From: Phaeosaccion multiseriatum
Taxonomy: Eukaryota > Protista > Ochrophyta, other classes
Assembly (NCBI GenBank): GCA_965112735.1
Contig: OZ218950.1
Span: 5,952,001-6,016,000 of the forward strand
DNA: 64,000 bases
Reading direction: 5' to 3'
Below, in pieces: positions 20,453 through 53,559 of the stretch. A model generated the notes under the pieces. It had not been told where the DNA came from. It worked only from the letters and a program-made list of their open reading frames with translations, and ran no database searches. The translations under genes were made by a program, and so were the position numbers. Each line of letters starts with the position of its first letter. Within the stretch, counting starts at the first letter, position 1.

Positions 20453-22525
20453 ATGAGTGATACCTGCGGAGCGCGGGCCTTGAGTACTGTGGCCAGTCTT
20501 TTCCCGACACACAAGGCCCTGTGGGGAGTGTGCAAGGAGGTGGACAAGCTCACGTGCCGCACTCTGGTCCTTAGCGCCGACATGCCTGGTGATGTCAAGA
20601 GGCGCATGCTTAGCATGCTGGAGGAGCAGCAGCAGAAAGACGAGGAGAAGCACCATACTGCATCTTCATCTTCTTGGTCGGGGACTAGGCCTGCTGCTGC
20701 CGCAGATCAGGATGCGCTCGAAAGGGGGGGGAAGCGGGCAAAGGGAAGAGCACAGCGCCAGCTGCCCGAGAGCTCACAGCGCGATGAGACTGGGCCGGGG
20801 AATGAGAGGCGCTCATTTTGCGTGATCGCCGTGCGTCTCGGCGCCCAGAGTGGACGCGGCCCTCCTGCCCCTGAAGAGGCTCTCGTTGTCAACGTGTTGT
20901 CCATGTTGCCACGGTCGGTGAAGGGTGTGCTCTTCTCTGAGGCTTTCAATCAGTCTGATGTGTTATTGCCGAGCTCGCTGGAGGAGGTGACATTCGGGAG
21001 GGACTTTGACAGACCCATTGCTTTCCCTCCCTCGCTGAGGAAGCTTACTTTTGCCGAGGACTCGCTGTTCAATCAGCCTGATGTGTTGTTGCCGAGCTCG
21101 CTGGAGGAGGTGACATTCGGGAGGTACTTTGACAGATCCATCGCTTTTCCTCCCTTGCTGAGGAAGCTTACTTTCAGCTCGTTTTCGGCGTTCAATCAGC
21201 CTAGTGTGATCCTGCCGAGCTCGCTGGAGGAGGTGACATTCGGGAGGTACTTTAACAGACCCATCACTTTCCCTCCCTCGCTGAGGAAGCTCACTTTCCT
21301 CTCTACCTCACAGTTCAATCAGCCTGATGTGTTGTTGCCGAGCTCGCTGGAGGAGGTGAAATTCTGGTGTCATTTCAACAGACCCATCGCTTTCCCTCCC
21401 TCGCTGAGGAAGCTTATTTTCCACTGGGATTCGGCGTTCAATCAGCCTGATGTGTTGTTGCCGAGCTCGCTGGAGGAGGTGACATTCGGGAGGTTCTTTG
21501 ACAGACCCATCGCTTTCCCTCCCTCGCTGAGGAAGCTTACTTTCTTCTCTACCTCAGTGTTCAATCAGCCTGATGTGATCCTGCCGAGCTCGCTGGAGAA
21601 GGTGACATTCGGGAGGGACTTTGACAGACCGATCGCTTTCCCTCCCTCGCTGAGGAAGCTTACTTTCTACTTCAATTCGGCGTTCAATCAGCCTGATGTG
21701 ATCCTGCCGAGCGCGCTGGAGGAGGTGACATTCGGGAAGGACTTTAACAGACCCATCGCTTTCCCTCCATCTCTGAGGAAGCTTACTTTCTCCGATATCT
21801 CGCGGTTCAATCAGCCTGACGTGTTGTTGCCGAGCTCGCTGGAGGAGGTGACGTTCGGGCAGTACTTTAACAGACCCGTCGCTTTCCCTCCCTCGCTGAG
21901 GAAGCTTACTTTCAGCTTGTTTTCGGTGTTCAATCAGTCTGATGTGATCCTGCCGAGCTCGCTGGAGGAGGTGACATTCGGGAGGGCCTTTGACAGACCC
22001 ATCGCTTTCCCTCCCTCGCTGAGGAAGCTTAGTTTCTCCTATCCCTCGCAGTTCAATCAGCCTGATGTGATCCTGCCGAGCTCGCTGGAGGAGGTGACAT
22101 TCGGGAGGTACTTTAACAGACCCGTCGCTTTCCCTCCCTCGCTGAGGAAGCTCACTTTCTGCTTGGGTTCGGCGTTCAATCAGCCTGACGTGTTGTTGCC
22201 GAGCTCGCTGGAGGAGGTGACATTCGGGAGGGACTTTAACAGACCCGTCGCTTTCCCTCCCTCGCTGAGGAGGCTTACCTTCGGCAGGTATTCGGCGTTC
22301 AATCAGCAGTTGATTCTTCCTTGTGGTGTGGAGGAGGTGGTGATGGGGCCCGGCTTTGAGCAGCCCTTGCAGCTCCCTGCGTCTCTGCGGAGACTGACGC
22401 TGGGAAAGAGGTACACCTGTCCATTGACGGACCTACCTGCTGGCCTCCAGTATCTCAAGGTTGAGAGGCAGTGCCCGCTGCCCGCAGATCTGCCCGAGGG
22501 GCTCAGGGTGGAGTACTATTCTTGA
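20453..22525 (+). CDS. FNIP-repeat protein C (11 units), intronless
   Basis: ATG at 20453 (conserved MSDTCG), 690 aa. Confidence 0.93.
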   Translation: MSDTCGARALSTVASLFPTHKALWGVCKEVDKLTCRTLVLSADMPGDVKRRMLSMLEEQQQKDEEKHHTASSSSWSGTRPAAAADQDALERGGKRAKGRAQRQLPESSQRDETGPGNERRSFCVIAVRLGAQSGRGPPAPEEALVVNVLSMLPRSVKGVLFSEAFNQSDVLLPSSLEEVTFGRDFDRPIAFPPSLRKLTFAEDSLFNQPDVLLPSSLEEVTFGRYFDRSIAFPPLLRKLTFSSFSAFNQPSVILPSSLEEVTFGRYFNRPITFPPSLRKLTFLSTSQFNQPDVLLPSSLEEVKFWCHFNRPIAFPPSLRKLIFHWDSAFNQPDVLLPSSLEEVTFGRFFDRPIAFPPSLRKLTFFSTSVFNQPDVILPSSLEKVTFGRDFDRPIAFPPSLRKLTFYFNSAFNQPDVILPSALEEVTFGKDFNRPIAFPPSLRKLTFSDISRFNQPDVLLPSSLEEVTFGQYFNRPVAFPPSLRKLTFSLFSVFNQSDVILPSSLEEVTFGRAFDRPIAFPPSLRKLSFSYPSQFNQPDVILPSSLEEVTFGRYFNRPVAFPPSLRKLTFCLGSAFNQPDVLLPSSLEEVTFGRDFNRPVAFPPSLRRLTFGRYSAFNQQLILPCGVEEVVMGPGFEQPLQLPASLRRLTLGKRYTCPLTDLPAGLQYLKVERQCPLPADLPEGLRVEYYS

Positions 22526-23501
22526 CACACAAGCTCTCCCGTTTTCCCGCGCCTTGCGAAGCAATCAGAAGCGGGGCAGAGTTGCGAAGGAATCAGACGC
22601 CCTCTGCAAGCCAGGAGGAGGAGAGGAGGCCCCATCCAGGTGTGTGCCAAGAGAGGCTGGTGTGCGGAGTGGTGGGGTCTGTGTAGGTGCAGTGTAGGCA
22701 GGAGCGTGGGCTTGCACTCACTCGCTGTGGGCGGTGGTGGTCAGCGGAGTCGGAGTCAGGCCTGCTGAATGCAACCCCCTTCCTCTGAACTGACTCATTT
22801 CGCTGTTGCTCTCCCTGCTTGCCTGCCGGTTAGGTGGGAAGAAAGCGACCTGTCCGCCACCGGAGAAGAGGGCAGAAGGGGCCGAGACTCCGAAGAGGAG
22901 GAGCGGTAGGCGGAGGAAGTGCCGATCGCTTCGCGAGGAAGGAAGGGGTCAGGGAGGCAGGGAGGAAGGAGGGAACGACAGTGGGGGCGGTTCGGAGTCA
23001 GAGCAATGATAATGACATCCATCGGGCTTAATTGACATACAAGGGCATTTTACAACCCACACAACTGGGCTGGGCCGGCCCCTGCTGTGCGTGCACCCTT
23101 TCACCACTCGTACGATGCAGAGAAGAAGAGGAGTCGCCACCGCAGCAAGAGTAAGAGGAGGCTGCGCTTGCCATCACAGTACGTTAGTTTGGTTGGTTTC
23201 AGTAGTCAAGTTTTTTTTTTTTTTAAATTAGTAATTTGTACTGTACACTCTACACGCCTCCTTCCCCTCTCAACACTATGGCACACAATACGAGCCGCAC
23301 TTAGAAGCCCCAGACGACACCTGTCCGTGGGGCCCCGTGAGTATACCGCACATTGTTTCGACTCTAGCCTCCTCTCTTCCCCTTACCCCCCCCCCCGCGT
23401 CCCTCCAGTGGGGTAAACGCACTGGCAAGAGGGCTGATCCCTCCATCCCCACTCTCGCACCCCGGCCCTTGGGGTCCCCAACCCGGCACATGGCGAGCTT
23501 A

Positions 23502-24965
23502 TCATGCCATCTCCTCCGCCACCTCCTGCAGCACCTCAGGGCTAACCTCTCTCTGCGACACCTTCAGCCTCCCTTCCTTGCCAAAGAGGCGGTCAGTGCC
23601 CCGCATCAGGTCCAACGCGCTTTGTGACGCAAAGTGATGTCTATCCGCGGCCAGAAGGCACTCGACCGCGGCAACATTGTGGAGCCCTCGGTGTTTACTC
23701 AAAGCCTTTTCCAGTGAGGACCCTCCGGAGAGCAGCTCTAGTACCGCGCCGCTGTTGCCTCGTCGTGCCGCCATACTCAGAGGCGTCCATCCAGGACCCA
23801 AACTGCCCTCATTGTCAGGATTGGCTCCGGCAGACAGAAGATCACGAATAGCTCCCCTATGCCCCCCCCAAGCTGCCAGGGACAACGGTGTGTTACCATC
23901 TGCAGCCCGCGCCTCCACGTCAGCCCCTCCTAAGATGAGTTCCTCCGCGACACCAGCACGGCCATGTTGACATGCCAAGTGAAGGACTTCAAACCCATTG
24001 CCAGTCCTCGCACTGATCTCTGCACCAGCCCTGACAAGCTTTCGCACCACGCTTCTATGCCCTCCTACCACGGTTGCTGCCATTAAGGCAGTTTTTTTTT
24101 GCTCACCATTGGGCCTGTCGAGATCAGCGCCGGCTGTGATGAGCTGCTCCACTCCACCAACATGACCACTCGCGCTCGCAACACAAAGTGGGAAAAAACC
24201 ATTGCTTGTAGCGATGTTCGCATCAGCCCCGGAGGTGAGCAGCAGCCGCATCATCCTGTCGTCTCCTGCCTGTGCAGCGAGGTACAACGGGGTTAAGCCA
24301 TGGCAATTCCGACCATCCACATAGTTGGGGTTAGCCCCCCCTGAAAGCAGCTGCTGCACCACTGTATAATACCCTAGCTGGGACGCCACAAGCAAGGGTG
24401 TGCCACCATCCATCTTCGCCTTGTCGACTTGAGCACCAGCGGAAAGAAGCTGCTGCACCACTTTCTCTTTCCCACTCTGACATGCTATAATCAGAGCCGT
24501 ACTGCCAGCGCCAGCTCCTCTCGCCGCCAAGTCCACGCTGGCACCAGCAGATAGCAGCATTTGTACAATCGCCACGTGTCCTTCACCGGATGCCGTTGTA
24601 AGTGCCGTATATTGGTCCTCCGGGTTTAAATCGACGTCAGCCCCAGCAGACAGAAGCTGACGTACAGCAGCAGCATTCGGCAATCGCGCTGCCATTCCCA
24701 AGGGACACAAATGCAGGGAAGTAGCATTCGGCGACGCCCCCTCCTGCAGCAAAAACGCAATGATATCTCCCCTGCCGATATTGATAGCCACCACTAGGGC
24801 AAGGTCGCCTGCCTCGGTGAGGGGCTCGTCCAAGCATGTCTTTCTCCCTCCGTTCTTAGCGACGAGGGCCCTTACAGGCGCTTGAACCTTCTTCGCGCTC
24901 TGGCCAACTCTGATGCCTTCATACAGGCGGGTGGCCTGCCACAAGAAGAGGGGGACATATCTCAT
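23502..24965 (-). CDS. Ankyrin-repeat protein (roughly 11-12 repeats), apparently intronless
   Basis: 487-aa ORF with repeated G-T(P/A)L..A...G...VV..LL..GA.VD motifs. The true start could lie further upstream. Confidence 0.9.
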   Translation of the reverse strand: MRYVPLFLWQATRLYEGIRVGQSAKKVQAPVRALVAKNGGRKTCLDEPLTEAGDLALVVAINIGRGDIIAFLLQEGASPNATSLHLCPLGMAARLPNAAAVRQLLSAGADVDLNPEDQYTALTTASGEGHVAIVQMLLSAGASVDLAARGAGAGSTALIIACQSGKEKVVQQLLSAGAQVDKAKMDGGTPLLVASQLGYYTVVQQLLSGGANPNYVDGRNCHGLTPLYLAAQAGDDRMMRLLLTSGADANIATSNGFFPLCVASASGHVGGVEQLITAGADLDRPNGEQKKTALMAATVVGGHRSVVRKLVRAGAEISARTGNGFEVLHLACQHGRAGVAEELILGGADVEARAADGNTPLSLAAWGGHRGAIRDLLSAGANPDNEGSLGPGWTPLSMAARRGNSGAVLELLSGGSSLEKALSKHRGLHNVAAVECLLAADRHHFASQSALDLMRGTDRLFGKEGRLKVSQREVSPEVLQEVAEEMA

Positions 24966-25302
24966 TGAGAAGGCGGAGGGGGAAGGGGGGGCTGTGGAAA
25001 ACAGGCATGCGTTGTGGCTACGTCCTCCCTCCCCTCAGGATCTTACCTCGTTGCTGAAGGTCCTCTGCATGGCGAGGAGTAGAGCGAAGGGAAGGAGGGG
25101 AGGAGGGCTTTTGTAGGTGAAGAAGTATTAAAAAAAGACGGAATTTTTAGCAATCCATGTGTCCCCACCTAATCCCCTCCCTCCCCCTTTTCTTTTTTTC
25201 CAACCCTCTGGTGTACTGCGTGTAATCCATCTCATCTTCCCTGTCCGCAGTACGAAAGTACAGAGAGGTAGTGGCAGTATTGGACGCGAACGAACGTAGA
25301 GG

Positions 25303-27317: not shown

Positions 27318-27364
<47 letters not shown>

Positions 27365-30042: not shown

Positions 30043-30121
<79 letters not shown>

Positions 30122-32267: not shown

Positions 32268-35200
32268 ACCACACTGGCAGGGGAGACGCTCCAGCTCACC
32301 AACTTGCGCAGGAGGGGCGAGTCCGATGGCGGGGGTCGTTCGCCGCGGGGTCCTGACACCGACACAAGGTCAAAGCGATGGCAGTGGATGGTAATACACA
32401 GCGCACGCAGGGGGTGGGGTTAGCACCACGGTTCTTCCTTCGTTGAAGGCTCTACACTACGCAGGTGGGATGGCAGTCCATGGTAAACAAAACATGTCCT
32501 CACTTCACCTGCATGGGCATTCGAAGCCGCAGCAGTGGCAGTTGGTGATACAGGACTCGGGCTACTCGCAGACACGTTGTGGAGCGGCGTAGTCCGTCCA
32601 TCTGCTGCCATCTTGGAGGAGCGCGATTCTTGCTCACTGCCCGTGTGCTCCCTCAAGTGTTGGCGGCGCCTCCGTCGCTGCCGTAGCACCAACTTCTCCT
32701 CCTCTTTCTGCAGCTGCTCCAACTGCTCCTTCAGCCGCTGCTGGAGCTGCCGCTGCACACGCACATGCCGCCGTTGCTCACCACCCACGCCTCCCCACTC
32801 CTTCCCTTCTTCACTGTCGTCTTCCTCTCCTTGTGCTTCGTCTCCTTCTTCTCCTTGTTGGTTTTCTTCTTCTTCATTTTCTTCCCCGTCCTCTCCGTTC
32901 CCCTCCAATACTCGCCCCTCGGTGTGGTGCCTCTCGTTATGGTCGTGACCACCCTCCTCCTCCTTATCCTCCTCCTGGCCGGGAGAAGGCATGCGATGTA
33001 GTCTACGACGTTGACCCTCCTCCTCCACATGCTGCTCCTGCTGCTGCTGCTGCTTCGAACGCAGCGAGCCCTTGGGGAGTATCGCTCTACCGCACAACGT
33101 CAGATGATACACCTTGGGTCGGAAGCGTAGCTCCTCCTCCTCTATCTGCAGGCCGTACACGTCGCCAGTTGGAAACACGCGTACTTCCAACACGGCCTCG
33201 TATACGGGAGACTGAGGGGGGCGGCGGCGGTACCCATCCACCACATCGGCCCTTCTTCGTCTCGAGTCACTACGACGACGACGACTGCGTAGGGTGCCAT
33301 CGCCCCCCCCCTCCTCCCTCTCCTCCACGTTCCCCTCTTCCTCTTCCTCCCTCTCCTCCTCCTGCTGCTGCTGCAGTGGAAGAGTGCGCTGCGGCGGCCG
33401 GAAGCGTATGTAGACCGACTCCCTCTTGAGAGGTCCTAGCTCGAACCAGGGCTGCCCCACCACCTCGAAGCCCTCCACAACCGAGGGGGAGGAGGAGGAG
33501 AGGGGGTTGCTGTAGTATGTCATTGGGGACGAGATTCGATGTCAGGGTCAGAATCAGGGTCAGGGTCACGGTCACGGTCAGGGTAAGGGTCAGGGTCAGG
33601 GTCAGGTCTTGAAAGCAAAGGAGGAAGGTCCCTCCCATTTCCACCATACCCCCTACCTTCCACCGCTCCCCGCGCTTGTGCCCCCTCCCCCCGGGAAGAG
33701 CTCCAACTGCACCATACAGCGGTAGCCCTGCAAGTTCCTGGTACCAAGCATCTTGCTGCTCGCCCCCCCGGGGCTCAAGCCGCCCCACGACAGGGAGAGA
33801 GAAAAGGGGTCGACCTGCATTCGGTGGTGGGTGTGGAAGAAGCAGCAGGAAGAGGCGGAGGAAGGAGGAGTGGTCTGGTGTTAGTTTCAGAAGCAGCAGG
33901 AAGGGCAGAAGAAGGAAATGGGCTTGACATTGACAGTGTGTTGTCAGAGGCAGAAAGGAAAGAAAGGAAGGGCCCGGAGGGGGTTGCCACAAAGGTGTCA
34001 AGTGGGGTGGACGCACCTGCAGGCACGGAGGCTCCAGCGCCAGTCCCATCAGCGCCACACGCGTCTCTCTTTCTCTCTCCCCCCCTCTCTCTCTCCCTCG
34101 ACCCCCTCGGCCGTGCCTACCGCCGCTGCCGCCGCTGCCTCGCCCTCTTGCTGTGCTGGAAATACCGTCGTCGTCGTGATGATGTTCGTATTGGTGTTTG
34201 TGTTGGTGTTGGTGTTGGTGCTGTCGTAGTCGTGCGAAGCGCAGCACGAGTGTGGCTCCATGCATCCCTTGTTCCCGAGGGAGGAAGGCCACTCGGAAGG
34301 TCTGAGAAGCGAAGAGACAGCGAGAGGGATGGAGATAGAGATAGACAGAGGGGGAGAGAGAAAAGGTGCGTTTGTGTGGAATAGAGAGAGAGAGAGATGG
34401 AGTGAAAGCGCGCGCGTGAGGGGTTGCAGCCGCACGGGCGACAAGAGGCGCGTTCGAGGACAGAGTGGAAGCGGAGAGAAGGGTAGGAGACAAGCAAGGG
34501 TCGGTGGGAGGAAGGACGCGCCGCAGAATTGGGAAGGGGAGATCACATCTCAGCCCGGAACGCACGAACGCACGAACGCACCCGCTTGCCGCCGCCCTGC
34601 ACGGACATGGCGCCGCCGCCCCCGCCGCTGCTGCTACCGCCTCCTCCTCCTCCTCCTCCTCCTCCTCCTCCTCCTCCTCCTCCTCCTCCTCCTCCTCCTC
34701 CTCCTCCTCTTCCTCTCCCGCTCTCCAGTGAAAATGCCCCCTCCAGGCCGTGTTCGCTCCACACAGTCAAAGCACCCTCCTGTCCTCCTCCCCCCCCTCC
34801 TCCTTCTTCTCCTCCTCCCTTCTGATCCGTGATGGACAGCAGCACCTCACACAGATAAGGAAAGGGGTTCTCCGCCACAATCTCGCCGAGGGTTTCCATC
34901 CCGACATACGTCCCTATCTTCAGCACGGCTGCGGACGTGGACCTCTCTTCTGTTGAGCTCTCACTTCCTTCGTGCTTGTGGTCGCCGCTCTGCCCCCTAT
35001 CACTACGGCCGCTGCCGTACATTCTCTTCCCTCGCCTCCCTTCCCTACTCCTCTCTATCCCCACTGGCGCTGCCGCTGCCACTGAAGGAGCAGCGCCCAG
35101 GTGGACATAGGCACCACCACCACCACCACCACCACCACCACCACCACCACCACCATCATCATCATAATCATCATCATCATCCTCGTCGCCATCGCCACCG

Positions 35201-38188
35201 AGGTATCGAGACGACCGCCACCCCCACCCCATCTGATCCTCCTTGTGCACCTCCTCCTCCTCCTCCTCCTCCTCCTCCTCCTGCTGCTGCTGCTGCTGCC
35301 TCCCATACATGTAGGTGCGCGTGCTCTTGTCCTCAAGACCAGCGAGGTAGCCCTCGCTGTAGTCAGAGATGGCACCAGAGCGCCGCCGTCGTTGCTGATC
35401 ACCATACAGCACCTCTTCCTCCTCATCATAACCATTACCATCATGATGATGATCATGACGGTGATGAAGGCGAGGGGAAGAGCGGTGGGGACGATCCCAC
35501 CTAGACACATCAATGTCGGAAAGCTCCGTCTCCACCGAGTCGTTCAAGCCGGCCCATATGCCTCTGTCTGTGCCTCTGCCCGTGCCTGCGTCGTCGTCCT
35601 CCTCACCGCCGCCTCTGGCGTGTGGTGCAGGCCCCAAGCCGGCGTCCGCTTCGTCTTCGTCGTCCGACCAGCCCTGCTGCCCCCTTCTCCTCCTCCTCCT
35701 CCTCCTCCACCCTGTGCCTCTTTCACCTCCTTCACTGCCGTCACTGCTGCCTAAATTGGAGTCTCGCTCATCGTTCACTCCGCTCCTCCTCCTCCTCCTC
35801 GTCGTCGTCTTCGTCGTCGCTGACGTTGTTCTCGTCGCCCTTCTGCCAGCAGAATGCACCTCGCTTAACCCGCCTCTGATGCCGCCGCTGCTGCCCCTGC
35901 TCCTACCTCTACTCCTGCTCCTGCTCCTACTGCCCTCGGCCATAATGTACCCAGTCCCCCCTCGCCGGTACTCCACCCCCCCCCCCCACTCCTCCTCCTC
36001 CTCACCCTCCTCCTCCGACTCCTCCTCCCCCTCTAGCCCTCTCCCTGGCCGTGCGTGAACCCTCCTCGACCTCGACCTCGATCTCGCTGATGCCGGCGAG
36101 GTTGGCACTGACACCCTGTATCTCCTTGCACTATTCTCACTGTAACCGTTGTAACTGTCTCTTTCGTCTTGCTCTCGCACGCCTCTTTCCTCCGTCTTGT
36201 CACCCCGAGTGGAATCATCAACATCGGAAGCAGCGGGTCGCTTGTATCCCCCGCCACCCCTACCAACACCGCCACAACCACCACCCCCACCACCACCCCC
36301 AACAGAAGAGGCCCTACTGCTGCTGTCGCGCCACCCTCCCTGATCCTGGCCTTCGTTCGGCTGCTTATCCTGCGAACGTTGTAGGGGCTTTCGCTCTTCG
36401 CGCATTGCCTGACGGGGACGATTGGGTATCGGAGGTCTGTCGACGGCGCGCCCTGACCGCCTGTGCTGCTGTATCGCCAACTGTTGGTGCTGCTCCTGTT
36501 GTAACCGTTGCCGTTGCTGCTGTATTCGGGTGCGAATGTCGAGTTTCTCACCCACCTTCACATCGCCTGCAGCTGCACCTTTTCTGGCCGCAGAACGGCT
36601 ACTCGTACTACCATCAGCAGTTGGTGATACAGCACCGATTTCATCCGTGTCGCTGGTCGCGACGTCGATACTGCTTAGCTCCCCACTGGCGATGGAAAGT
36701 TTGCCGCTGCCTCTGTCATCCACTGCCATCCGTAAGGGTGCTTGCCTCTCCTTTCCCTTTCCCAACGTCACAAAGCCGCCCTCTCGGATCAATCGCAACG
36801 CCTCCCTCTTGATCCTCTCGTCCTCCTCATCCTCCTCCCCCTCCACCACCACCTCCTCCTCGCCTTCACCACCACCACTGTATTCGACCACGCCACCACT
36901 ACCCCGAGCCGAGAAAGTACGAAGGCCCTCATCTGTCTCCGACGCCCCATTCGTCACAACGACAGCAGCACCCTCCTCCTCCTCCTCCTCCTCCTCGCCC
37001 CCAAGGCTACCATCGTCATCGTCATTTTGGTCTTTCGCAAGCACCGCACCCTTGACCACCACATCGCCCACATCGGAAGAGAGACGCCCGCTGATGCGAC
37101 TCACATTGATACCGCTCAAAAAGTTGCGCGACTCAAAGCCCAAGCCATCCCCATCGCCATGGCCGTTCCCCTCCTCATGTTCAGCAGCGGATGATCCAGC
37201 CGCGGCCCTCCCCTCGGGAAGGAGCAATCCGAGCCCTGATGCTGACAGCGTGGCTCTGCTCAAGGCAGCGGCCAAAAGGGAAGCCCTCTCCGCAGCGTCC
37301 ACCCCTCCCCTCCCTCTGCTGCCATCTGCCACTCTGGTGCCATCTGTGGCGTTGCCGCTACTGGTAGTGGCATTGGTGGTAGTGGTGGTGTTGCTGCTCC
37401 TAGCTACAGTGGCCTTGGAGGGCCCCTCCTCGTGGCTCTGCGATCCTCTGCTGGTCCTGCCCGCCCCTCCCCTCCCTCTTCTCGACCCCCTTCTGCCCCC
37501 ATCCACGCTGCCATTGCCAAGCCCGAGGAAAGAGGAGGACGACCCCGGGGGGGGTCCCAAAGGAGGTCCCAGTGGGTGTGCCAGCGAGGAGGAGGAGGCC
37601 TCTCTACCTCGACCCTTCCGACGACTTCCTGCGCCTTCCTCCTCCTCCTCCTCCTCCTCCATCTGCTCATCCTCCTCCTCCTCATCCAGCCAGTCTTCCT
37701 GCCCTTCTTCCCGCTCTCCTCCTCTGTCGCCAGCCCTCGTGACGTTGATGCTGCTGAGGTCGGGGCCGTAATAGCCGGACTCACTGTTGCGCTGTGGTTT
37801 TGCATCACCTTGCCCCTTGTTGCCGTGGTGGTGGTCAGAGGAGCTTGTCTTGGTCGACTTGCCCTCCTCCTCTCCATGCGCACTTGATGATGGTGCATGC
37901 CAGTCGTTGTCTTCATGCCCTTCCTGCCCCTCCCCCTCGCCCATTCTCTCGCTCTGCTGCTCCTCTCCCTCTCGGCGCTGGATGGCACTCAAAGGAGTCT
38001 CATTACGTAAGTTATGTAAGTTCACCGACGCCCCCCTTGGCAACACTCGCTGTATCGCCAACTCCTCCTCCTCTGTCGCCCCGGTGAACGCCGAATCTCC
38101 TCCTCCTCTAGGCCCATCATTTGCGCGATCTTCCCCGCCCATTCCCCTTTCCTCTGCAGGCGCGCCTGCCTCTGCTCCTGCATCGCCA

Positions 38189-38234
<46 letters not shown>

Positions 38235-39164
38235 CTTCCTCCTCCGCCACCCAAGCCCGTGCCGCAGCTACCTCCTCGTTATAGCGCCGCTGCTTAGTCT
38301 CCAGAGCAGTGACGGCCATTGCAGCGGCAGTGGCAGCAGCATCCGCTGCCGCAGCAACGCCTCCTTCCTCCCCCCTCTGTGCCTGAGCCTGAGCCTCGAA
38401 GGAGCCGCCGACTACACCTGCACCTCTGCCAGGGATTGCTGTATCACCAACTGGCACACGATCGCTTCCCTCCTGCCCTGCGTCCTCCCCAGCCCTATCC
38501 CCAGCCCGTGCAGCAGTAGCCCCCGAAGGAGCCGCAGAGCCCTCTTCTGTCGTCGACAGCTGCTGTTGCTGTCCCTGCTTTTCCACTGTCCGAATGGAGG
38601 AGAGCATGCGTGCTCCGGTCAGCATTACTTCCTCCACTCGCTCGTCCAGCTTGTCCCCCTCTCCCTCTCCGTCTCCCTGCTCTTCTCGTCGTTGCTGTGC
38701 GCTGCCACCCTCTGCCCTTGGGCTCCTCCTTCGCTGCTCTTCTGCCACTACCCGTCCCTCTCGCCGCCCCGTATTACCCTCCCCCCCTCCTGGCCGAGAC
38801 GAAACCGACCCTCCTGACGGCGGCGGCGGCGGAGAAGAAGAAGGAGACGAGGAGATATGCTGGCAGATATGCTGGCGGAACGGGGACGTGGAGGTGGGGG
38901 GCTTCCCCCCCAATACTCCCATGCCTTGCCCTCCCCGTTTCCGCACCGGGGTGGTGCGTATCTGCCCGTCACCACCGTCACCCCCGACAATATGTGCTGC
39001 AGCAAGGGCCTCTGCCCCGGCCCCTGTCCCTCTCCGCAAGGGGGAGGGAGAGAGAGAAGACATCGTGGAGTGCGCCGAGTCGCGTGAGAAAGACAGGTCC
39101 CGAAAGACTGTGGAGGGGGTGGACATGCTCCCTCCCCCGCTGCCATCTGTGATTCCGCTGCCGT

Positions 39165-39195
<31 letters not shown>

Positions 39196-39783
39196 GGAGA
39201 GGCCCGATGCTCCTCCTCCCAGCTCGCTCGCATCCTCTTCCCTCCCTTCTTCTACGGTGGAGGCTTGAGTTTCATCCGTGACCGGGTCCGTGATGTAGCT
39301 GCCTTTGCAGTAAGAGGGCTCCAATTCAGCTTCATCACCAGCGCGTGGGACCATCACTGTGTCAGCAACTCCTGCCTCTGCAGCCTTTCCTTCGTCCTGT
39401 GGGAGGAGCGAGAGAGAGCAGTCTCCCAGCTCCGGTCGCTCTCCTTTGGTGTCTTCGTTGGGCAGCTGCGAGTTGACTGCCATCATCTCCACCACCTCCG
39501 GCTTCTCTTGCCCTTCTCCATCATCCTCCTCGGTCCCTGCTGCTGCGCTGTTGTTGTTGGTGCCTGTGTGAGATTGAGTTTCAATCAACACTGCTTGAGA
39601 CATCCTCCTTTCCTCCTCCTCCTGCTGCGGCAAAAGGAGGGACAGAGAGACGTCGTCAAGCCGCCTTCTCCTCACAGGGGAAGAGCAAGGCCCCTCAACG
39701 TCATCGATTTGGGGCAGCAGGGAGAGGGATGTGTCGTCCAGTCCACCTGGATAGCCATCCTGGTCATCGTTCACCTCCTTCAT
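29743..39783 (-). CDS. Large CEP192/SPD-2-like protein: ~5-kb low-complexity first exon, then ASH/Ig-like domains
   Basis: A 1746-aa open acidic/low-complexity ORF, then exons with ASH-like strands (FRVAFLPREQG, FELGPLKRESVYIRFRP, FIVANP, LDFG). The spliced C-terminus PFIVLHEHFTLRAQ|AYVWLPVRFMPVRAGVFEKSL...VALRG resembles the last CEP192 domain as recalled. Internal junctions are approximate. Confidence 0.6.
30037..30121. repeat. (GGGTGA)n hexamer tract, intronic
   Basis: About 14 copies next to the last acceptor of the CEP192-like gene. Confidence 0.9.
30240..30610. repeat. 23-bp intronic minisatellite
   Basis: Tandem GGGTGGGTGGGTGTCAGGACAGA, about 15 copies. Confidence 0.93.
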
Positions 39784-45168: not shown

Positions 45169-45436
45169 GTGAGGGAGGGAGGGAGGGAGGGAGGGAGGGA
45201 GGGAAGGAGGGAGGGATGGAGTCGACTCCGCCTCCGCCTGACAACACACCATGGTACCTGGCCTACCCTTTGAAAAGAGAGGACTCACAGCCCTCTCCAT
45301 CCACTGCCACCCTCCCCCGTCTCTCTTCTCCCCTTGCTGCTGCGACTGCCTCCATCTCTAACTCCCTCCCTTCTTGTGATGTGCGTGTGCGTGTGCGTGT
45401 GCGTGTGTGTGCGCGTGTGTGTGCGTATTGGCACAG

Positions 45437-48400
45437 CTGCCTGCCTTCGCCCGAGTGGTGGTCATCGGAGCGGGATCGAGTGGCCTGGCAGCCGCAGCGG
45501 TACTGTCGGAAGGCTTCCAGACACAGAGACGGAGCCGTGATGGCGAGAACAAGAAGCGACCTCGGTCCGTCAAAGGCACCGTTAGTAACCCACCTTCTAC
45601 TGATGGTGAGTAGCGAGGCACGACGAGGGAGAGGAGACATTGGATGGGTGGGTGGGTCGGTGGGTGAGTTGACGGATGGATGGATGGATGGACTGATGGA
45701 CTGACTGATCATTGGCAAGCTAGCCTGGTCATCATTGTGGCAAAGCTCTGGTGGACTGGCTGTCGGGCCATCCATCCACCTATCCACCCATCCAACCAGA
45801 CCAATAGAGTCTTACCGCCCCCGCACCGGTCGTCCGATCACATGCTCAGAACTTCTGTACTTTTTCGTACTTGCTGTTGCTGTTGGTGTTGCTGCTACTA
45901 TTGCTGTTGCTGTGATTCTACCCCATGTGGTGGGGTACACGATCGATGCCCTACCCGACTTACCGACATCGATCATCGATTATGGGCTGAATGTAACACC
46001 TACCAAAATCCAACGCCACCCAACGGTGCGCAGTGTTGGTAGTGGAGGCAAGTAGCTCTCTGGGCGGCACTTGGACTCGCCAATACGAGGGGCTCCATAT
46101 CACCACCCGGCGAAGGTACTGCTCCCTGCCGCTGTACCCCATTCCGCAGGACGGTGGTTATCCGGAGGAGGTGCTCACAGCTGGCGATTATGTGACGTAT
46201 CTCCGAGCCTATGCGGCCCGCTTCGCTCTCGACGTTCGGACGGGGGTGGAGGTGACCACTTGCTGCCGTACCGCAACAGCAGCAGCAGCAGGAGGAGGAG
46301 GAGGAGGAGGAGGAGGAGGAGGAGGAGGAGGAGGAGGAGGAAGGGGGGGGGATGACAATGGATGCAAGAACGGAGGGTGGCGGATGGAAGGAGAAGAAGA
46401 CGGAACAAGGCGCGGAGCGCTCGTGGTGATGACCTCGACCGGGCAGCGCATTCGGTGCGACCATGTAGTCATTGCCTCAGGTAGGTCGAGGTCTGTGCAT
46501 GTGTGTGTATGTGTGTGTGTGTGCGTGCGTGTGTATGTGTGTATGTCTGTATGTACGGTGCTTGTACTTGTGTGTGTGCGTGTGTGTTTTCTCCCCTCTG
46601 ATTCCCCCTCTCGTCTCCCCATACCAATCCACTGCCATCCCCCCCCCCCCCCCATCCACTGCCATAGGCAAGCATCAAGAGCCCTTCCTGCCCCCCGAGC
46701 TTCTCTCTCGGACGCTGCGCTCCTTCGCAGGCCCTGTGCTTCACTCCTCGCAGGTACCGTACTTTCGCATCGGTCCTCATCCACTCCCATCTAGAGGCAG
46801 AGAGAGAGAGAGAGTCCTCATCCACTGCCATCTAGATGCAGAGAGAGAGAGAGAGCGTTGCTAGTGCAGAGGACCGCAGCGGGGATTTTTGCACGCTTGC
46901 CCCTGTGCAGTTGGTGTGTGTGAGTGTGTGTGTGAGTGTGTGTGTAAGTAAGTAAGTGTTTGTGTGTGTATAAGTAGGTAAGTGTGTGTGTAAGTGTGTG
47001 TGTGTGCGCGCGCGTGAAGGGAGAGGGCGGGCGAATGAGGCTCTTCCCTCCTCACCCCCCCCTCCCTCGTACGTGCGTGTACATGTACGTGTGCGGCTGA
47101 CTCAGGTGACTGACTTGGCTGGCCTGGCCCTTCGAAGGGTGTGCATAGTGGGCTTCGGCAACAGCGCAGTGGACATCGCCACCGACCTCGCAGGGAGAGG
47201 CTGCCCGCAGGTACCGTTCTTACTTTCAACCTACCCTGCCCTGCCCATGCACCTCAATCCTACTCTTACTATGCCTCTCCTGCCCTGCCCATACACCTCT
47301 ACCCTGCCCTGCCCTGCCCATACACCTCTACTCTGCCCTGCCCATACACCTCTACCCTACCCCTGCCGATACACCTCTACCCTGCCCTGCCCATACACCT
47401 CTACCCTGCTCTGCCCATACACCTCTGCCCTGCTCTGCCCTGTCCATAAACCTCTACCCTGCTCTGCCCATACACCTCTGCCCTACTCTGCCCTGCCCAT
47501 ACACCTCTACCCTGCCCTGCCCATCACCTCTACCCTGCCCTGCCCTGCCCATACACCTCTACTCTGCCCTGCCCATACACCTCTACCCTACCCCTGCCCA
47601 TACACCTCTACCCTGCCCTGCCCATACACCTCTACCCTGCTCTGCCCATACACCTCTGCCCTGCTCTGCCCTGTCCATAAACCTCTACCCTGCTCTGCCC
47701 ATACACCTCTGCCCTGCTCTGCCCTGCCCATACACCTCTACCCTGCCCTGCCCATACACCTCTACCCTGCCCTGCCCATACACCTCTACTCTACCCTGCA
47801 GGTGGTGCTCAGCACCCGCTCCGTCCCCCCCATCATCTGCCGACAGTGGGGCTTCCTCTCCATCGAGCGTGTCAGCCTCCTCTTGGGGCAGTTCCTCCCT
47901 GCTGGGGTGGCAGACGCCATCCTGGAGGCGGTGGGGCGCCTTCGCTGGGGTGAGTGAGTGAGCGGCTCGCAAGGAAAACTAGCGTAGTGTAGAGGGGGTG
48001 GGTTGGTGGGTTGATGGGTGGATGGATTGGGTGGGTTGTTGGGTTGGGGTCAGGTTGATGGGTGGGCCGATCTTTGGGCGAGTAGGGCTGGGCTGGGCTG
48101 GTGTGGGCTGGGCCTTAGGGCTTCCTCTGCCGCATGCGGCGGAGTAGTGTCGCACGTCGCCACTGACACGCACACACACACATTATCGACAACACACACG
48201 CACATACACAAACACACACACACGCACACACACACGCACACACACACGCACACACACACACACGCCATGCATTGCCCTGTGCGCTTGCGCCTTGCGACGC
48301 GCTGCTGCCCTGCAGGAAGGCGGTGGAAGGAAGACGGATCCATCTTCCCCAGGTGTCTGCTGCAAGGAGAGGCAAGCAGCAGCAGTCATATGGGCAGCAG

Positions 48401-49379
48401 CGAGCCCCTTACTGGCCGGCGGTGGAGGGCGCGCGAGTCGGGAAGGATACCCGTAATCGACAAGGGACATTTAGTGTCACACCTCAAGTCGGGCCGAATC
48501 CAAGTGAGTGAGGGAGGGGGGGGGGAGGGAGGAAGGAAGGAAGGAAGGAAGGAATGGGTGGATGGATGGATGGATGGAGGGAGGGAGGGAGGGAAGGAGG
48601 AATGTAGGTAGGGAGGGAGGGAGAAAGGGAAGGAGGGACTGAGTCCGTGAGCGACTGAGTATGGGCATGCGTGAGTGACTGAGTTAGGGAGTGATGACTT
48701 TTGAGCCCCTCCCCTGTTCCTTCTCTTCTCAGCGAGCGCAGCTCTCAAACTCAAACTCCCATCACACGTTTCGAGATGTCAAACATTCTTGATACCGCCA
48801 CGATGCTTTATCACCAACTGCTACTGCTGTATCGCCAACTGTTGTTCGCTTCCCCCCCGCCAGGTACGGGGTCCTTTGCTAGGCTGCCAGGCGAGTTGTG
48901 GTAGCGGGGGGCGCCTCTCTTTCCTCGGGGAAGCGCCCTCGCCATCATCTGCCATAGCGCGGCCCTTGGGCTCAGCAGCAGGCACCACACCCAACAACGA
49001 CCGCAGTAGAAGAGGCAATTTTATGGGTGGCAGCGTAGTCACAGATGCCGTTGGTAGGTGTGAGATGGAGGCCGACGTCGTGGTGGTGGCCACGGGCTTC
49101 AAGTCGGGCTTCTTAACCTTCCTCTCGCCAGAGCTCTGCCCCCGACAGCAGCAGCAGCAGCAGCAGTTGGTGATCCATCAGCAGACGGGGAGGGGTGGAG
49201 GGGACAAGGCCGAGTCCTCCGTGTCTACATCGGGCTCCGAGTCGGGGTCAGGAAAAGGGTCAGTGCATTGGGTGGGCTTCGACAACGGCCGAGCTCTGCT
49301 GCCGCTGAGACAGGCGGGGATTGAAGCCATGCAAGTGGGCAGGACAATCCTCAGGGACTATGAGGGAGGGAGGGAGTGA
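45437..49379 (+). CDS. Flavin-containing monooxygenase (class B, FMO/YUCCA-like) domain, 7 exons, no own in-frame ATG
   Basis: VVVIGAGSSGLAAA, VVEASSSLGGTW..QYEGLH, DHVVIASG, FAGPVLHSSQ, VCIVGFGNSAVDIATDL, PVIDKG, ADVVVVATGF. Stop at 49377-49379. Confidence 0.85.
47233..47800. repeat. CCCTGCCCATACACCTCTAC minisatellite filling an FMO intron
   Basis: Reverse complement of the unit at 6012 and 10195. It runs right up to the acceptor CCCTGCAG. Confidence 0.93.
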
Positions 49380-49719
49380 GCCTTTGCCTCAGAGAGGGGG
49401 TGTGCGAGCGAGCGAGGGAAGGAGTACAAGCTTAGACCCCGCCCGCACAGCGAAGCAAAGCAAAGCAAGGCGAAGGGAAGGGAAACGGGTAGATGCCCGA
49501 CCTTGATGTCAGTGTGTCGGACGGAAGTTTTCCTTTATCCCATTCTAAGACCAATTTATTTTAGGGGGGGGGGGGAGGGGGGGGGGGGGAGGGCGCGAGT
49601 GGCTGTCAGCGAGCAGGAGGCACGGCCGGGGGAGAAGAAGGGGGCCAAGCAACGCCAGCCAGCCAAGCAGCAACGGGCACTTGGCTCCCCACGCGGCAAA
49701 TCCAATCTTTGAGGGTTGG

Positions 49720-51354: not shown

Positions 51355-51483
51355 GTTGGTGCACCGCGCTGGTTCACAGGTTTCTGGTGATGTCTATTAA
51401 GTCAATAAGACCCCTCGCGACTTGGTTCCTCTCCACTTTCTTTGCTTTATCATTACATCGAGACTCATCATCCTTGGAGAAGC

Positions 51484-53559
51484 ATGAGTGATACCTGCGG
51501 AGCGCGGGCCTTGAGTACTGTGGCCAGCCTTTTCCCGACACTCAAGGCCCTGTGGGGAGTGTGCAAGGAGGTGGACAAGCTCACGTGCCGCACTCTGGTC
51601 CTTAGCGCCGACATGCCTGGTGATGTCAAGAGGCGCATGCTTAGCATGCTGGAGGAGCAGCAGCAGAAAGACGAGGAGAAGCACCATACTGCATCTTCGT
51701 CTTCTTGGTCGGGGACTAGGGCTGCTGTTACTGCAGATCAGGATGCGCTCGAAAGGCGGGGGAAGCGGGCAAAGGGAAGGGCACAGCGCCAGCTGCCCGA
51801 GAGCTCACAGCGCAGAGAGACTAGGCGGGGAAAGGAGAGGCGCTCATTTTGCGTGACCGCCGTGCGTCTCGGCGCCCAGAGTCGACGCGACCCTTCTGCC
51901 CCTGGAAAGGCTGTCGTTGTCAAAGTGTTGTCCATGTTGCCACGGTCGGTGAAGGGTGTGCTCTTCTCTCACACTTTCAATCAGCCTCATATGATCCTGC
52001 CGGGCTCGCTGGAGGAGTTGACATTCGGGAGGGACTTTAACAGACCCATCGCTTTCCCTCCCTCGCTGAGGAAGCTTACTTTCTGCTCGGAATCGGCGTT
52101 CAATCAGCCTGATGTGATCCTGCCGAGCTCGCTGGAGGAGGTGACATTCGGGAGGAACTTTGACAGACCCGTCGCTTTCCCTCCCTCGCTGAGGAAGCTT
52201 ACTTTCTACGGGGGTTCGACGTTCAATCAGCCTGATGCGATCCTGCCGAGCTCGCTGGAGGAGGTGACATTCGGGGAGCGCTTTAACAGACCCATCGCTT
52301 TCCCTCCCTCGCTGAGGAAGCTTACTTTCTGCTCGGAATCGGCGTTCAATCAGCCTGATGTGTTGTTGCCGAGCTCGCTGGAGGAGGTGACATTCGGGGA
52401 GCGCTTTAACAGACCCATCGCTTTCCCTCCCTCGCTGAGGAAGCTTATTTTCCACTGGGATTCGGCGTTCAATCAGCCTGATGTGTTGTTGCCGAGCTCG
52501 CTTGAGGAGGTGACATTCGGGAGGTTCTTTGACAGACCCATCGCTTTCCCTCCCTCGCTGAGGAAGCTTACTTTCTTCTCTACCTCAGTGTTGAATCAGC
52601 CTGATGTGATCCTGCCGAGCTCGCTGGAGAAGGTGACATTCGGGAGGGACTTTGACAGACCCATCGCTTTCCCTCCCTCGCTGAGGAAGCTTACTTTCTA
52701 CTTCAATTCGGCGTTCAATCAGCCTGATGTGATCCTGCCGAGCGCGCTGGAGGAGGTGACATTCGGGAAGGACTTTAACAGACCCATCGCTTTCCCTCCC
52801 TCGCTGAGGAAGCTTACTTTCTCCGATATCTCGCGGTTCAATCAGCCTGACGTGTTGTTGCCGAGCTCGCTGGAGGAGGTGACGTTCGGGCAGTACTTTA
52901 ACAGACCCGTCGCTTTCCCTCCCTCGCTGAGGAAGCTTACTTTCAGCTTGTTTTCGGTGTTCAATCAGTCTGATGTGATCCTGCCGAGCTCGCTGGAGGA
53001 GGTGACATTCGGGAGGGCCTTTGACAGACCCATCGCTTTCCCTCCCTCGCTGAGGAAGCTTAGTTTCTCCTATCCCTCGCAGTTCAATCAGCCTGATGTG
53101 ATCCTGCCGAGCTCGCTGGAGGAGGTGACATTCGGGAGGTACTTTAACAGACCCGTCGCTTTCCCTCCCTCGCTGAGGAAGCTCACTTTCTGCTTGGGTT
53201 CGGCGTTCAATCAGCCTGATGTGATCCTGCCGAGCTCGCTGGACGAGGTGACATTCGGGAAGCGTTTTAACAGACCCGTCGCTTTCCCTCCCTCGCTGAG
53301 GAAGCTTGCTTTCAACTGGAATTCGGCGTTCAATCAGCAGTTGATTCTTCCTTGTGGTGTGGAGGAGGTGGTGATGGGGCCCGGCTTCAAGCAGCCCTTG
53401 CAGCTCCCTGCGTCTCTGCGGAGGCTGACGCTGGGAAAGAGGTACACCTGTCCATTGACGGACCTGCCTGCTGGCCTCCAGTATCTCAAGGTTAGCAGGT
53501 ATCTCCCGCTGCCCGCAGATCTGCCGGAGGGGCTCCGCGTGGAGTACAACTATTCTTGA
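51484..53559 (+). CDS. FNIP-repeat protein D (11 units), intronless
   Basis: ATG at 51484, 691 aa. Shares a run of about seven units with gene C. Confidence 0.93.
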   Translation: MSDTCGARALSTVASLFPTLKALWGVCKEVDKLTCRTLVLSADMPGDVKRRMLSMLEEQQQKDEEKHHTASSSSWSGTRAAVTADQDALERRGKRAKGRAQRQLPESSQRRETRRGKERRSFCVTAVRLGAQSRRDPSAPGKAVVVKVLSMLPRSVKGVLFSHTFNQPHMILPGSLEELTFGRDFNRPIAFPPSLRKLTFCSESAFNQPDVILPSSLEEVTFGRNFDRPVAFPPSLRKLTFYGGSTFNQPDAILPSSLEEVTFGERFNRPIAFPPSLRKLTFCSESAFNQPDVLLPSSLEEVTFGERFNRPIAFPPSLRKLIFHWDSAFNQPDVLLPSSLEEVTFGRFFDRPIAFPPSLRKLTFFSTSVLNQPDVILPSSLEKVTFGRDFDRPIAFPPSLRKLTFYFNSAFNQPDVILPSALEEVTFGKDFNRPIAFPPSLRKLTFSDISRFNQPDVLLPSSLEEVTFGQYFNRPVAFPPSLRKLTFSLFSVFNQSDVILPSSLEEVTFGRAFDRPIAFPPSLRKLSFSYPSQFNQPDVILPSSLEEVTFGRYFNRPVAFPPSLRKLTFCLGSAFNQPDVILPSSLDEVTFGKRFNRPVAFPPSLRKLAFNWNSAFNQQLILPCGVEEVVMGPGFKQPLQLPASLRRLTLGKRYTCPLTDLPAGLQYLKVSRYLPLPADLPEGLRVEYNYS

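What the first reader, a model, noticed from the sequence alone, without database searches (positions are those of the whole stretch)
21381..53330. Repeat modules are exchanged between paralogues 31 kb apart
Seen: genes C (~21381-22190) and D (~52412-53220) share an ordered ~800-bp run HWDSA-RF-FSTSV-RD-YFNSA-KD-SDISR-QY-SLFSV-RA-SYPSQ-RY-CLGSA, yet differ before and after it. A and C share the terminal CLGSA-RD-GRYSA. A and D share CLGSA..SSLDEV. D and E share KR..KLAFxWNSA. HWDSA also recurs in E. Cap polymorphisms assort independently (ERQC in B and C; SRYL in A, D and E; GKRY in C and D; FNHP in B and E). Inference: recurrent gene conversion or unequal crossover through the homogenised framework produces combinatorial diversity.
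Basis: partly seen in the sequence, partly recalled or inferred. Interest (0 to 1): 0.8.

Follow-up and report, generated by a model that had tools for sequence, protein, structure and literature searches.

The report
FNIP-repeat genes exchange repeat blocks
Five neighbouring genes for leucine-rich-repeat (FNIP/FGxxFN-type) proteins in an algal genome are patchworks of one another because runs of repeats have been copied between gene copies; this is a well-known way for recognition-protein families to evolve, seen here in a family where it had not been described.

Summary
Genes C and D, 31,031 bp apart, share an 812-bp stretch (C 21377-22188 = D 52408-53219) with 5 mismatches (99.4%). The repeat units on either side are 85-88% identical and the non-coding flanks 86-96%. 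This block has only these two copies in the 67-Mb genome; the next best match is 89%.

Permutation tests (GENECONV-like, 3SEQ-like, PHI) and segment trees with AU tests all reject a single tree. C looks like F/G at its 5' end, D in the middle and F at its 3' end. F lies on the opposite strand, and the C-D patch is bounded on both sides. This points to non-reciprocal interlocus gene conversion. Unequal exchange better explains unit-number changes and out-of-register tracts.

The genes belong to a family of at least about 140 loci of FGxxFN leucine-rich-repeat proteins. Each 41-residue unit has six hypervariable codons in a family-wide uniform framework.

This is the process known from plant resistance-gene clusters and Tetrahymena LRR genes: a new member of a known kind. 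I found no sign of a dedicated diversification machine. First-stage readers of this scan noted the same phenomenon on adjacent DNA (s1-362997, s1-362840). Assembly error could not be tested.

The parts
9989..23015 (+). Tandem array 1: genes A, B and C, each preceded by a homologous spacer of about 2.4 kb
   Evidence: Self-BLAST: 9989-11677 matches 13875-15559 at 95.8%; 10306-11604 matches 18993-20297 at 93.5%; homology downstream of C ends near 23015
51355..58163 (+). Tandem array 2: genes D and E. Homology upstream of D begins only about 130 bp before its ATG
   Evidence: Self-BLAST rows 15491-17473 / 51355-53338 and 16713-18545 / 56336-58163. The last 100 nt upstream are 100% identical between D and E
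11848..13179 (+). Gene A: orphan N-terminal domain, 5 repeat units, C-cap
   Evidence: AF2 model: helical N-domain, disordered linker, LRR solenoid
15619..18060 (+). Gene B: 14 units with internal 249-bp duplications (unit types 05/06 recur)
20453..22525 (+). Gene C: 11 units; a mosaic that is F/G/B-like at the 5' end, D-like in the middle and F-like at the 3' end
51484..53559 (+). Gene D: 11 units
55854..57680 (+). Gene E: 9 units
21377..22188 (+). C copy of the shared block, from after patch 1 of unit 4 to the start of unit 11
   Evidence: 5 mismatches in 812 bp against D. Only two copies at 99% or more in the genome; the next best is 89%
52408..53219 (+). D copy of the shared block
22174..22519 (+). 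C 3' tract (end of unit 10, unit 11, cap) shared with paralogue F, which lies outside the window at G000:C1:5939337-5941403 on the opposite strand
   Evidence: 346 bp at 98.6%; unit 11 is 100% identical
20453..21175 (+). C 5' tract (N-domain to unit 2) shared with paralogue G (G000:C1:5943922-5945988, opposite strand)
   Evidence: 723 bp at 97.1%; unit 1 is 97.6% identical to G1 but 85-89% to D, F and I
12702..12886 (+). A tract (units 3-5) shared out of register with D units 9-11 (53076-53260)
   Evidence: 185 bp at 97.8%
52594..52820 (+). D tract (units 6-7) shared out of register with E units 1-2 (56346-56572)
   Evidence: 227 bp at 96.9%
14073..14300 (+). G-rich 24-bp minisatellite present in every internal spacer (also at 10163-10413, 18977-19121 and 54460-54592)
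   Evidence: Tandem Repeats Finder. Any role in recombination is speculation

Best explanation
The five genes belong to a young subfamily of 12 intact genes plus fragments. Nine of the twelve lie within 225 kb of contig 1. This subfamily sits inside a lineage-specific expansion of at least about 140 FGxxFN (FNIP) leucine-rich-repeat genes in a photosynthetic alga.

Each 41-residue unit makes two LRR turns. Its framework is equally uniform within and between genes (93% nt identity in both cases). Six codons are hypervariable: the xx of FGxxFN, and xxx.x of TFxxxSxFN. By homology with the CroV588/539 crystal structures these residues sit on the edge of the concave face, the presumed ligand-binding surface.

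The uniform framework offers long stretches of homology, so repair of DNA breaks can use a paralogue as template. This copies tracts of about 0.13-0.85 kb (one to seven units) from one gene into another, which is non-allelic gene conversion. Unequal alignment within and between genes changes unit number (5 to 14) and produces out-of-register copies.

The 812-bp C-D block is the youngest large tract in the window. It is 0.6% diverged, against about 4-5% for the genes' flanks.

Shown: the mosaic structure, its statistical significance, breakpoints in framework sequence, and the concentration of variability in six codons. Inferred: the repair mechanism, the direction of each transfer, that the new unit combinations change binding specificity, and that they are selected.
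For: - Block identity against background.
- Mosaic of C by segment.
- Tracts at 96.5% identity or more between many gene pairs. These include partners on the opposite strand (C-F, C-G), 220 kb away (H-L, 237 bp at 100%, out of register) and on another contig (E-I).
- GENECONV-like permutation: C-D has a run of 96 mismatch-free polymorphic sites against a permuted mean of 13 and maximum of 32.
- 3SEQ-like test, 0 of 20,000 permutations.
- PHI: z = -14 for the five-gene CDS, p = 0.004 for the N-domain, z = -6.4 for the cap; 36% of informative site pairs are incompatible.
- Conflicting segment trees and AU tests.
- Different nearest neighbours for upstream, N-domain, cap and downstream segments.
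- Hypervariable positions, with amino-acid entropy 2.3-3.3 bits against mostly under 0.8 in the framework (up to about 1.25 at three positions).
- dN/dS 1.86 at the six hypervariable codons against 0.46 in the framework.
- Framework identity 93.2% within genes and 93.1% between genes; 95 distinct patch combinations in 120 units.
- Fold and family: PF05725; phmmer to CroV588 at 9e-74 with our variable residues aligned to its xx; Foldseek top hits 6nyr and 7zal.
- Structural meaning of xx: PMC9525666.
Against: - There is one assembly and no reads, haplotypes or strains, so mis-assembly of 123-bp repeats cannot be excluded directly.
- In-register alignment of repeat arrays assumes positional homology.
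- The segments and clades for the AU tests were chosen after seeing the data. The 3' data do not formally reject (C,D) (p-AU 0.10), and the 5' data do so only marginally (p-AU 0.052).
- Donor and recipient cannot be told apart.
- dN/dS at the hypervariable codons is computed on saturated codons, where pathway averaging inflates pS.
- N-domain and cap have dN/dS near 1, which could mean relaxed constraint rather than adaptive change.
- No expression or function data exist. The claimed F-box was not found, so the downstream partner of these proteins is unknown.
Confidence: 0.85

Rival explanations
1. Assembly artefact. The assembler threaded reads from one FNIP gene into another, or duplicated or collapsed haplotypes, creating an apparent shared block.
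For: The genes consist of 123-bp units about 86% alike, with only one assembly and no read data.
Against: - The two copies differ at 5 sites, so they are not a copied consensus.
- Block boundaries are clean and the flanks are unique: D's upstream region is unrelated to C's.
- The genome is 22 contigs for 67 Mb. Contiguity of that order in a repeat-rich genome suggests, but does not show, a long-read assembly whose reads would span these 1.3-2.4-kb arrays.
- Many independent tracts with graded identity (96.5-100%) link genes on both strands and on other contigs. A single mis-join would not produce this.
Confidence: 0.05
2. A single ancient chimeric duplication. D (or C) was created by one unequal crossover or segmental duplication that joined parts of two genes. 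The flanks later diverged or were overwritten, and there is no recurrent exchange.
For: C and D have the same unit number and align in register over 2.7 kb at 94%. Tandem duplication clearly built the arrays.
Against: - The block (0.6% diverged) is bounded on both sides by much more diverged sequence: units 1-3 and 11 at 85-88%, downstream flank at 96%. One crossover gives one boundary.
- Overwritten flanks would themselves require conversion.
- C's ends match F, G and B while F's middle matches G, so several events are needed.
- The caps show all four combinations of multi-nucleotide haplotypes.
Confidence: 0.07
3. A programmed, high-rate diversification system. Mitotic gene conversion would be targeted to these arrays, for example started at the G-rich minisatellite in each spacer, so that clonal cells differ in their FNIP repertoire, as in lamprey VLR assembly or parasite antigenic variation.
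For: Hypervariable patches sit in a uniform framework. There are very young tracts at 100% identity. A conserved G-rich minisatellite lies in every internal spacer. The VLR analogy was already voiced for FGxxFN proteins (PMC9525666).
Against: - All 12 close paralogues are complete genes with N-domain, cap and intact ORF. None is an incomplete acceptor gene flanked by headless cassettes.
- Tract identities form a continuum from 96.5% to 100%, as expected of events spread over evolutionary time.
- The N-terminus has no hydrophobic stretch of the signal-peptide kind on reading it; no predictor was run. So a surface-antigen role is unsupported.
- No dedicated enzyme was seen in the window.
Confidence: 0.05
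4. No exchange. The identical run reflects strong purifying or convergent selection on those particular units in C and D.
For: Framework residues are strongly conserved throughout.
Against: - Identity extends to synonymous sites and to all hypervariable codons across six units, while the same positions differ freely in neighbouring units.
- Four of the five differences in the block are synonymous.
- Selection cannot produce 416 bp with no synonymous change when the non-coding flanks are 4% diverged.
Confidence: 0.01

Closest known systems
Plant resistance-gene clusters (NLR and receptor-like LRR genes such as Cf-4/9, RPP8, Pi2/9)
   Same: Tandemly arrayed LRR paralogues; sequence exchange by interlocus gene conversion and unequal crossing-over; hypervariable residues on the exposed LRR face with an excess of non-synonymous change. 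These are standard textbook points; examples are listed (PMC6771003, PMC3492116, PMC3113787).
   Different: A different LRR class (FGxxFN, 20+21-residue turns), no NB-ARC, kinase or transmembrane part, and an orphan helical N-domain instead. The host is a unicellular or simple alga, and an immune role is unproven.
Tetrahymena 90-bp-exon LRR genes (PMC6564038)
   Same: A protist LRR family of hundreds to thousands of genes. Near-identical repeat modules occur in different genes and on different chromosomes, which the authors attribute to ectopic recombination, unequal crossing-over or gene conversion. Repeat number varies.
   Different: There each module is an exon with phase-2 introns and a retrotransposon is implicated. 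Here the genes are intronless, the unit is 123 bp, and no transposon was found in the spacers.
FGxxFN / FNIP LRR proteins of CroV, Megavirus and Dictyostelium (structures 6nyr, 7zal; PMC9525666)
   Same: The same Pfam family and fold. The two residues between FG and FN are the most variable and lie on the edge of the concave face. Individual species carry large repertoires.
   Different: The unit is a pair of unequal turns, the second carrying a longer variable loop (xxxSx). Best identity outside this genome is only 37%. The N-domain has no detectable relative. I found no paper among the 31 mentioning 'FNIP repeat' that clearly analyses paralogue-to-paralogue conversion; I judged this from titles and abstracts only.
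Lamprey/hagfish variable lymphocyte receptors
   Same: Diversity arises by combining LRR modules through a copying (gene-conversion-like) process.
   Different: VLRs are assembled somatically into an incomplete germline gene from cassettes that lack gene ends. Here every copy is a complete gene, and the exchanges look evolutionary rather than developmental.

Membership tests
FNIP / FGxxFN leucine-rich-repeat proteins (Pfam PF05725) | Significant match to the PF05725 profile in repeated copies | tested here: met
   E 8e-71 (C), 3e-75 (D) and 1e-93 (B), with 11-25 matched stretches; cut-off 21 bits
FNIP / FGxxFN leucine-rich-repeat proteins (Pfam PF05725) | LxxLxFGxxFN motif at a period of about 21-22 residues, with the xx pair most variable | tested here: met
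   The unit reads ...SLEEVTFGxxFNRP...SLRKLTFxxxSxFNQP... (20+21 residues). Entropy peaks at positions 19, 20, 37-39 and 41
FNIP / FGxxFN leucine-rich-repeat proteins (Pfam PF05725) | Sequence and fold similarity to the solved members CroV588 and CroV539 | tested here: met
   phmmer 9e-74 and 1e-26. Foldseek on the AF2 model of A: 6nyr at E 8.5e-13, 7zal at 2.4e-8. Model pLDDT is only 67 overall, 64-91 (block means) in the repeats
F-box + FNIP subfamily (as in Megavirus and Dictyostelium) | N-terminal F-box domain | tested here: not met
   No F-box family in Pfam at E up to 10. An 11-sequence N-domain profile finds nothing in PDB at E up to 10. The AF2 N-domain model (4 helices, pLDDT 77) gives no F-box or Skp2-type match by Foldseek or VIA. 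A very degenerate F-box is not excluded
Interlocus (non-allelic) gene conversion | A tract of elevated identity bounded on both sides by lower identity between paralogues | tested here: met
   812 bp at 99.4% between 85-88% units. Further tracts
Interlocus (non-allelic) gene conversion | Statistically significant clustering of shared sites and conflict between segment trees | tested here: met
Interlocus (non-allelic) gene conversion | Non-reciprocal transfer, with the donor left unchanged | not testable with these tools
   This needs an outgroup, strains or pedigree data. It is supported only indirectly, by exchange between inverted copies and between contigs without rearrangement
VLR-type programmed assembly | An incomplete acceptor gene plus cassettes lacking gene ends | tested here: not met
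   All 12 close paralogues have N-domain, cap and an intact ORF. There are a few fragments elsewhere (contig 16, contig 2) but none beside these arrays
VLR-type programmed assembly | Somatic or clonal variation of the locus | not testable with these tools
   Needs read-level or single-cell data

The most novel reading that the evidence does not exclude
The FNIP arrays are a targeted, ongoing mitotic gene-conversion system. It might be started at the G-rich minisatellite found in every spacer. It would continually reshuffle hypervariable LRR modules within a clonal algal population, giving an intracellular recognition repertoire (for instance against giant viruses) that varies between sister cells.
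Probability: 0.05. Interest if true: 0.8.

Novelty: new member of a known kind. Interest (0 to 1): 0.4.

Why it matters
FGxxFN/FNIP repeat proteins are among the largest unexplained gene families in protists, brown algae and giant viruses, and their function is essentially unknown. This locus shows that an algal genome maintains at least about 140 of them. Variability is confined to six codons per unit on the predicted binding edge. Paralogues exchange blocks of units.

That places the family in the same evolutionary regime as plant resistance genes and other recognition repertoires. It gives a concrete reason to test these proteins as recognition or immune factors.

It also carries a practical warning. 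Trees and orthology calls for these genes are meaningless unless they are made segment by segment.

Tried and rejected
- **F-box at the N-terminus** (lead from note s1-336572). Pfam at E up to 10, a family profile against PDB, and an AF2 model searched with Foldseek and VIA-wide all gave nothing specific. It was therefore not used in the explanation.
- **Relatives of the N-domain outside the genome.** None were found by the word-based search.
- **Organism identification from a neighbouring ferric-reductase-like ORF.** No hits.
- **Close relatives in viral contigs**, to test recent virus-host transfer. None.
- **Genes or transposons in the spacers.** No Pfam hits for 10 spacer and flank ORFs. 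The bacterial promoter/terminator scan is irrelevant here.
- **First literature query.** It was badly posed and returned only generic gene-conversion papers.
- **Not attempted.** I did not scan metagenomes for strains: the tool note says records of this or a near genome may be left out, and protein searches found nothing above 37% identity.
- **Structure mapping.** I could not read the model coordinates, so the placement of hypervariable residues rests on the alignment to CroV588 and the published structure description.


Full report
**What is there**

The window (G000 contig 1, 5,952,001-6,016,000; genome 67 Mb in 22 contigs) is eukaryotic. It is about 58% G+C, rich in micro- and minisatellites and has sparse long ORFs. 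The genome has 54 light-harvesting-complex matches. The best solved relatives of one of them include fucoxanthin/violaxanthin-type chlorophyll a/c proteins. So this is a photosynthetic alga whose antenna proteins are of the chlorophyll a/c type. Other agents of this scan call it a stramenopile alga; I did not verify that.

Five intact ORFs on the + strand share a conserved start (MSDTCGA...): A 11848-13179, B 15619-18060, C 20453-22525, D 51484-53559, E 55854-57680. Each has four parts:
- a 164-residue N-terminal part: four predicted helices, then a charged, disordered linker;
- 5, 14, 11, 11 or 9 units of 41 residues (123 nt);
- a 75-77-residue cap.

All match Pfam FNIP PF05725 very strongly and the solved FGxxFN LRR proteins CroV588 and CroV539.

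The genes sit in two tandem arrays, A-B-C (9989-23015) and D-E (51355-58163). Genes within an array are separated by homologous spacers of about 2.4 kb. In those spacers and array flanks I found no protein domain.

**Checking the observation**

C and D have the same unit count and align without gaps at an offset of 31,031 bp. Identity per unit is 85, 88, 85, 93.5, 99.2, 98.4, 98.4, 100, 100, 100 and 87%. The high-identity stretch runs from 21377 to 22188 (D 52408-53219). It is 812 bp with five mismatches, and the last 416 bp have none. Four of the five mismatches are synonymous, and none touches a hypervariable codon.

To judge chance, I collected seven further close paralogues from the same genome:
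- F, G and H just upstream of the window on the opposite strand;
- L 140 kb downstream;
- I, J and K on contigs 13, 4 and 2.

I then compared all 127 units with each other. The median identity is 86.2% and the 99th percentile 95.1%. A genome-wide DNA search with the block finds only the C and D copies at 99% or more; the next best match is 89%.

**Is it recombination?**

The five 11-unit genes (C, D, F, G, I) align in register, and I used them for the formal tests.

- *Nearest neighbour by segment*. In the N-domain C is closest to F and G (99.6% and 99.2% in its first half, 96.7% and 97.2% in its second). In unit 1 it is closest to G (97.6%). In units 2-3 it has no close partner. From the end of unit 4 through unit 10 it is closest to D (98-100%). 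In unit 11 and the cap it is closest to F (100% and 96.9%).
- *GENECONV-like test*. Polymorphic-site order was permuted 10,000 times. No permutation reached the observed mismatch-free run for C-D (96 sites; permuted mean 13, maximum 32), C-F or F-G. C-G gave p = 3e-4 and D-F p = 2e-4.
- *3SEQ-like triplet walk*. C is a mosaic of D and F, or of D and G, at p < 5e-5.
- *PHI test*. It is significant for the five-gene CDS (z = -14; 36% of informative site pairs incompatible), for the N-domain of 12 genes (p = 0.004) and for the cap (z = -6.4).
- *ML trees by segment*. The block gives (C,D) and (F,G), both with 100/99 support, and rejects (C,F) at p-AU 6e-8. The 3' end gives (C,F) 99/98 and rejects (F,G) at p-AU 6e-4. 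The 3' data do not formally reject (C,D) (p-AU 0.10), and the groups were named after seeing the data.
- *Flanks*. The upstream, N-domain, cap and downstream segments of the 12 genes each have different nearest neighbours.

**Conversion or crossover?**

The C-D patch has two boundaries and is younger than what surrounds it. It is 0.6% diverged, against 4% in the 450 nt downstream, 5.5% in the N-domain and 12-15% in the neighbouring units. C's other partners, F and G, lie on the opposite strand. A crossover with them would invert the intervening DNA. Further tracts link genes 220 kb apart (H-L, 237 bp at 100%, shifted by two units) and on different contigs (E8-I10 at 98.4%, E6-K11 at 96.7%).

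Non-reciprocal copying explains these best. Tract lengths of 0.13-0.85 kb are typical for it.

Unequal alignment is also evident:
- Out-of-register tracts: A units 3-5 with D units 9-11, D units 6-7 with E units 1-2, and H with L.
- Internal duplications in B, H and J.
- Unit numbers ranging from 5 to 14.

Both C-D breakpoints fall in framework sequence between hypervariable patches.

**What is being shuffled**

Within the unit, amino-acid entropy is 2.3-3.3 bits at positions 19, 20, 37, 38, 39 and 41. Elsewhere it is mostly below 0.8, rising to about 1.25 at three framework positions. These six positions are the xx of FGxxFN and the xxx.x of TFxxxSxFN.

The alignment to CroV588 puts both patches on that protein's xx positions. 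[quoted passage not shown]

Pooled Nei-Gojobori estimates give dN/dS 1.86 at the six codons and 0.46 in the framework. The first figure comes from saturated codons and should be taken qualitatively.

Framework nucleotide identity is the same within genes (93.2%) and between genes (93.1%). There are 95 distinct patch combinations among 120 units. So the framework is uniform across the family, which provides the homology that recombination needs, while the patches stay diverse.

The N-domain and cap have dN/dS near 1, yet all 12 ORFs are intact.

**Family context**

A search with the last 53 residues of the cap scored 150 of 761 candidates. About 140 of these are separate loci, most inside ORFs of 400-900 residues, clustered on contigs 1, 9, 12 and 13. 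Outside this genome the best match is 37% identical (dinoflagellate, brown-algal and xanthophyte FNIP proteins). The N-domain has no detectable relative. No close relative was found in viral contigs.

The suggested F-box (note s1-336572) was not supported by Pfam, a PDB profile search or two fold searches.

**Comparison with what is known**

Sequence exchange among tandem LRR paralogues, with diversifying selection on exposed residues, is the textbook picture for plant resistance-gene clusters (examples). Module sharing by ectopic recombination or gene conversion has been described for the huge LRR family of Tetrahymena (PMC6564038). The position of the variable residues in FGxxFN repeats, and even the comparison with lamprey VLRs, are already in the literature.

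Three things are new here: the family and host, the two-turn unit with a second and longer variable loop, and the explicit demonstration of conversion mosaics. Unlike VLRs, every copy is a complete gene, and tract identities are graded from 96.5% to 100%. That fits events spread over evolutionary time rather than programmed assembly.

First-stage readers made the same kind of observation on the adjacent arrays upstream of this window (s1-362997, s1-362840). My analysis included those genes (F, G, H) and agrees.

**Verdict**

It is a new member of a known kind, of moderate interest. The main open risk is that no read-level check of the assembly was possible.

Noticed in passing
window 10163-10413, 14073-14300, 18977-19121, 54460-54592; also 6001-6108 and, on the reverse strand, 47231-47799: A G-rich 24-bp minisatellite (unit of the type GGGCAGGGCAGGGTAGAGGTGTAT, with runs of GGG) sits in every internal FNIP spacer and at two other places in the window. 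It might form G-quadruplexes or act as a recombination hotspot, but neither was tested.
   Followed up: no
window 11329-11391, 15216-15276, 20030-20086 and 13669-13730, 18576-18629, 54052-54122: Conserved microsatellites flank the genes. (AGTG)n lies about 400-500 bp upstream of A, B and C. (ATG)n lies about 500 bp downstream of A, B and D. They are part of the duplicated spacer.
   Followed up: no
window 11848-12339 and the equivalent part of B-E: The 164-residue N-terminal part (four helices, then a charged disordered linker) has no relative outside this genome by word search and no F-box signal. It evolves with dN/dS of about 1.1 among 12 paralogues while every ORF stays open.
   Followed up: partly
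window 23502-24965 (-): An intact 487-residue ankyrin-repeat protein gene lies immediately downstream of array 1 (Pfam Ank_2, E 3e-64).
   Followed up: no
window 34543-39783 (-): A 1746-residue uninterrupted ORF has no Pfam match. It lies in the most G+C-rich and strand-skewed part of the window.
   Followed up: no
window 261-1796 (-), repeats at 1026-1585: A 511-residue ORF with no Pfam match contains about nine copies of a 60-bp tandem repeat.
   Followed up: no
window 6451-7440 (-): An ORF has a ferric-reductase-type transmembrane domain (PF01794, E 1e-10), but the word-based protein search found no homologue.
   Followed up: partly
G000 contig 9, 474910-498129 (-) and 499006-521083 (+): Eleven light-harvesting-complex genes with identical profile scores form two head-to-head tandem arrays, a large palindrome-like arrangement. 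There are further tandem LHC arrays on contigs 15 and 8.
   Followed up: no
G000 contig 16 39338-40393 (-); contig 2 2544775-2545711 (-) and about 4135053-4135892: Truncated or fragmentary copies of this FNIP subfamily (a 359-residue ORF lacking the start, and short inverted pieces) are scattered away from the arrays.
   Followed up: no
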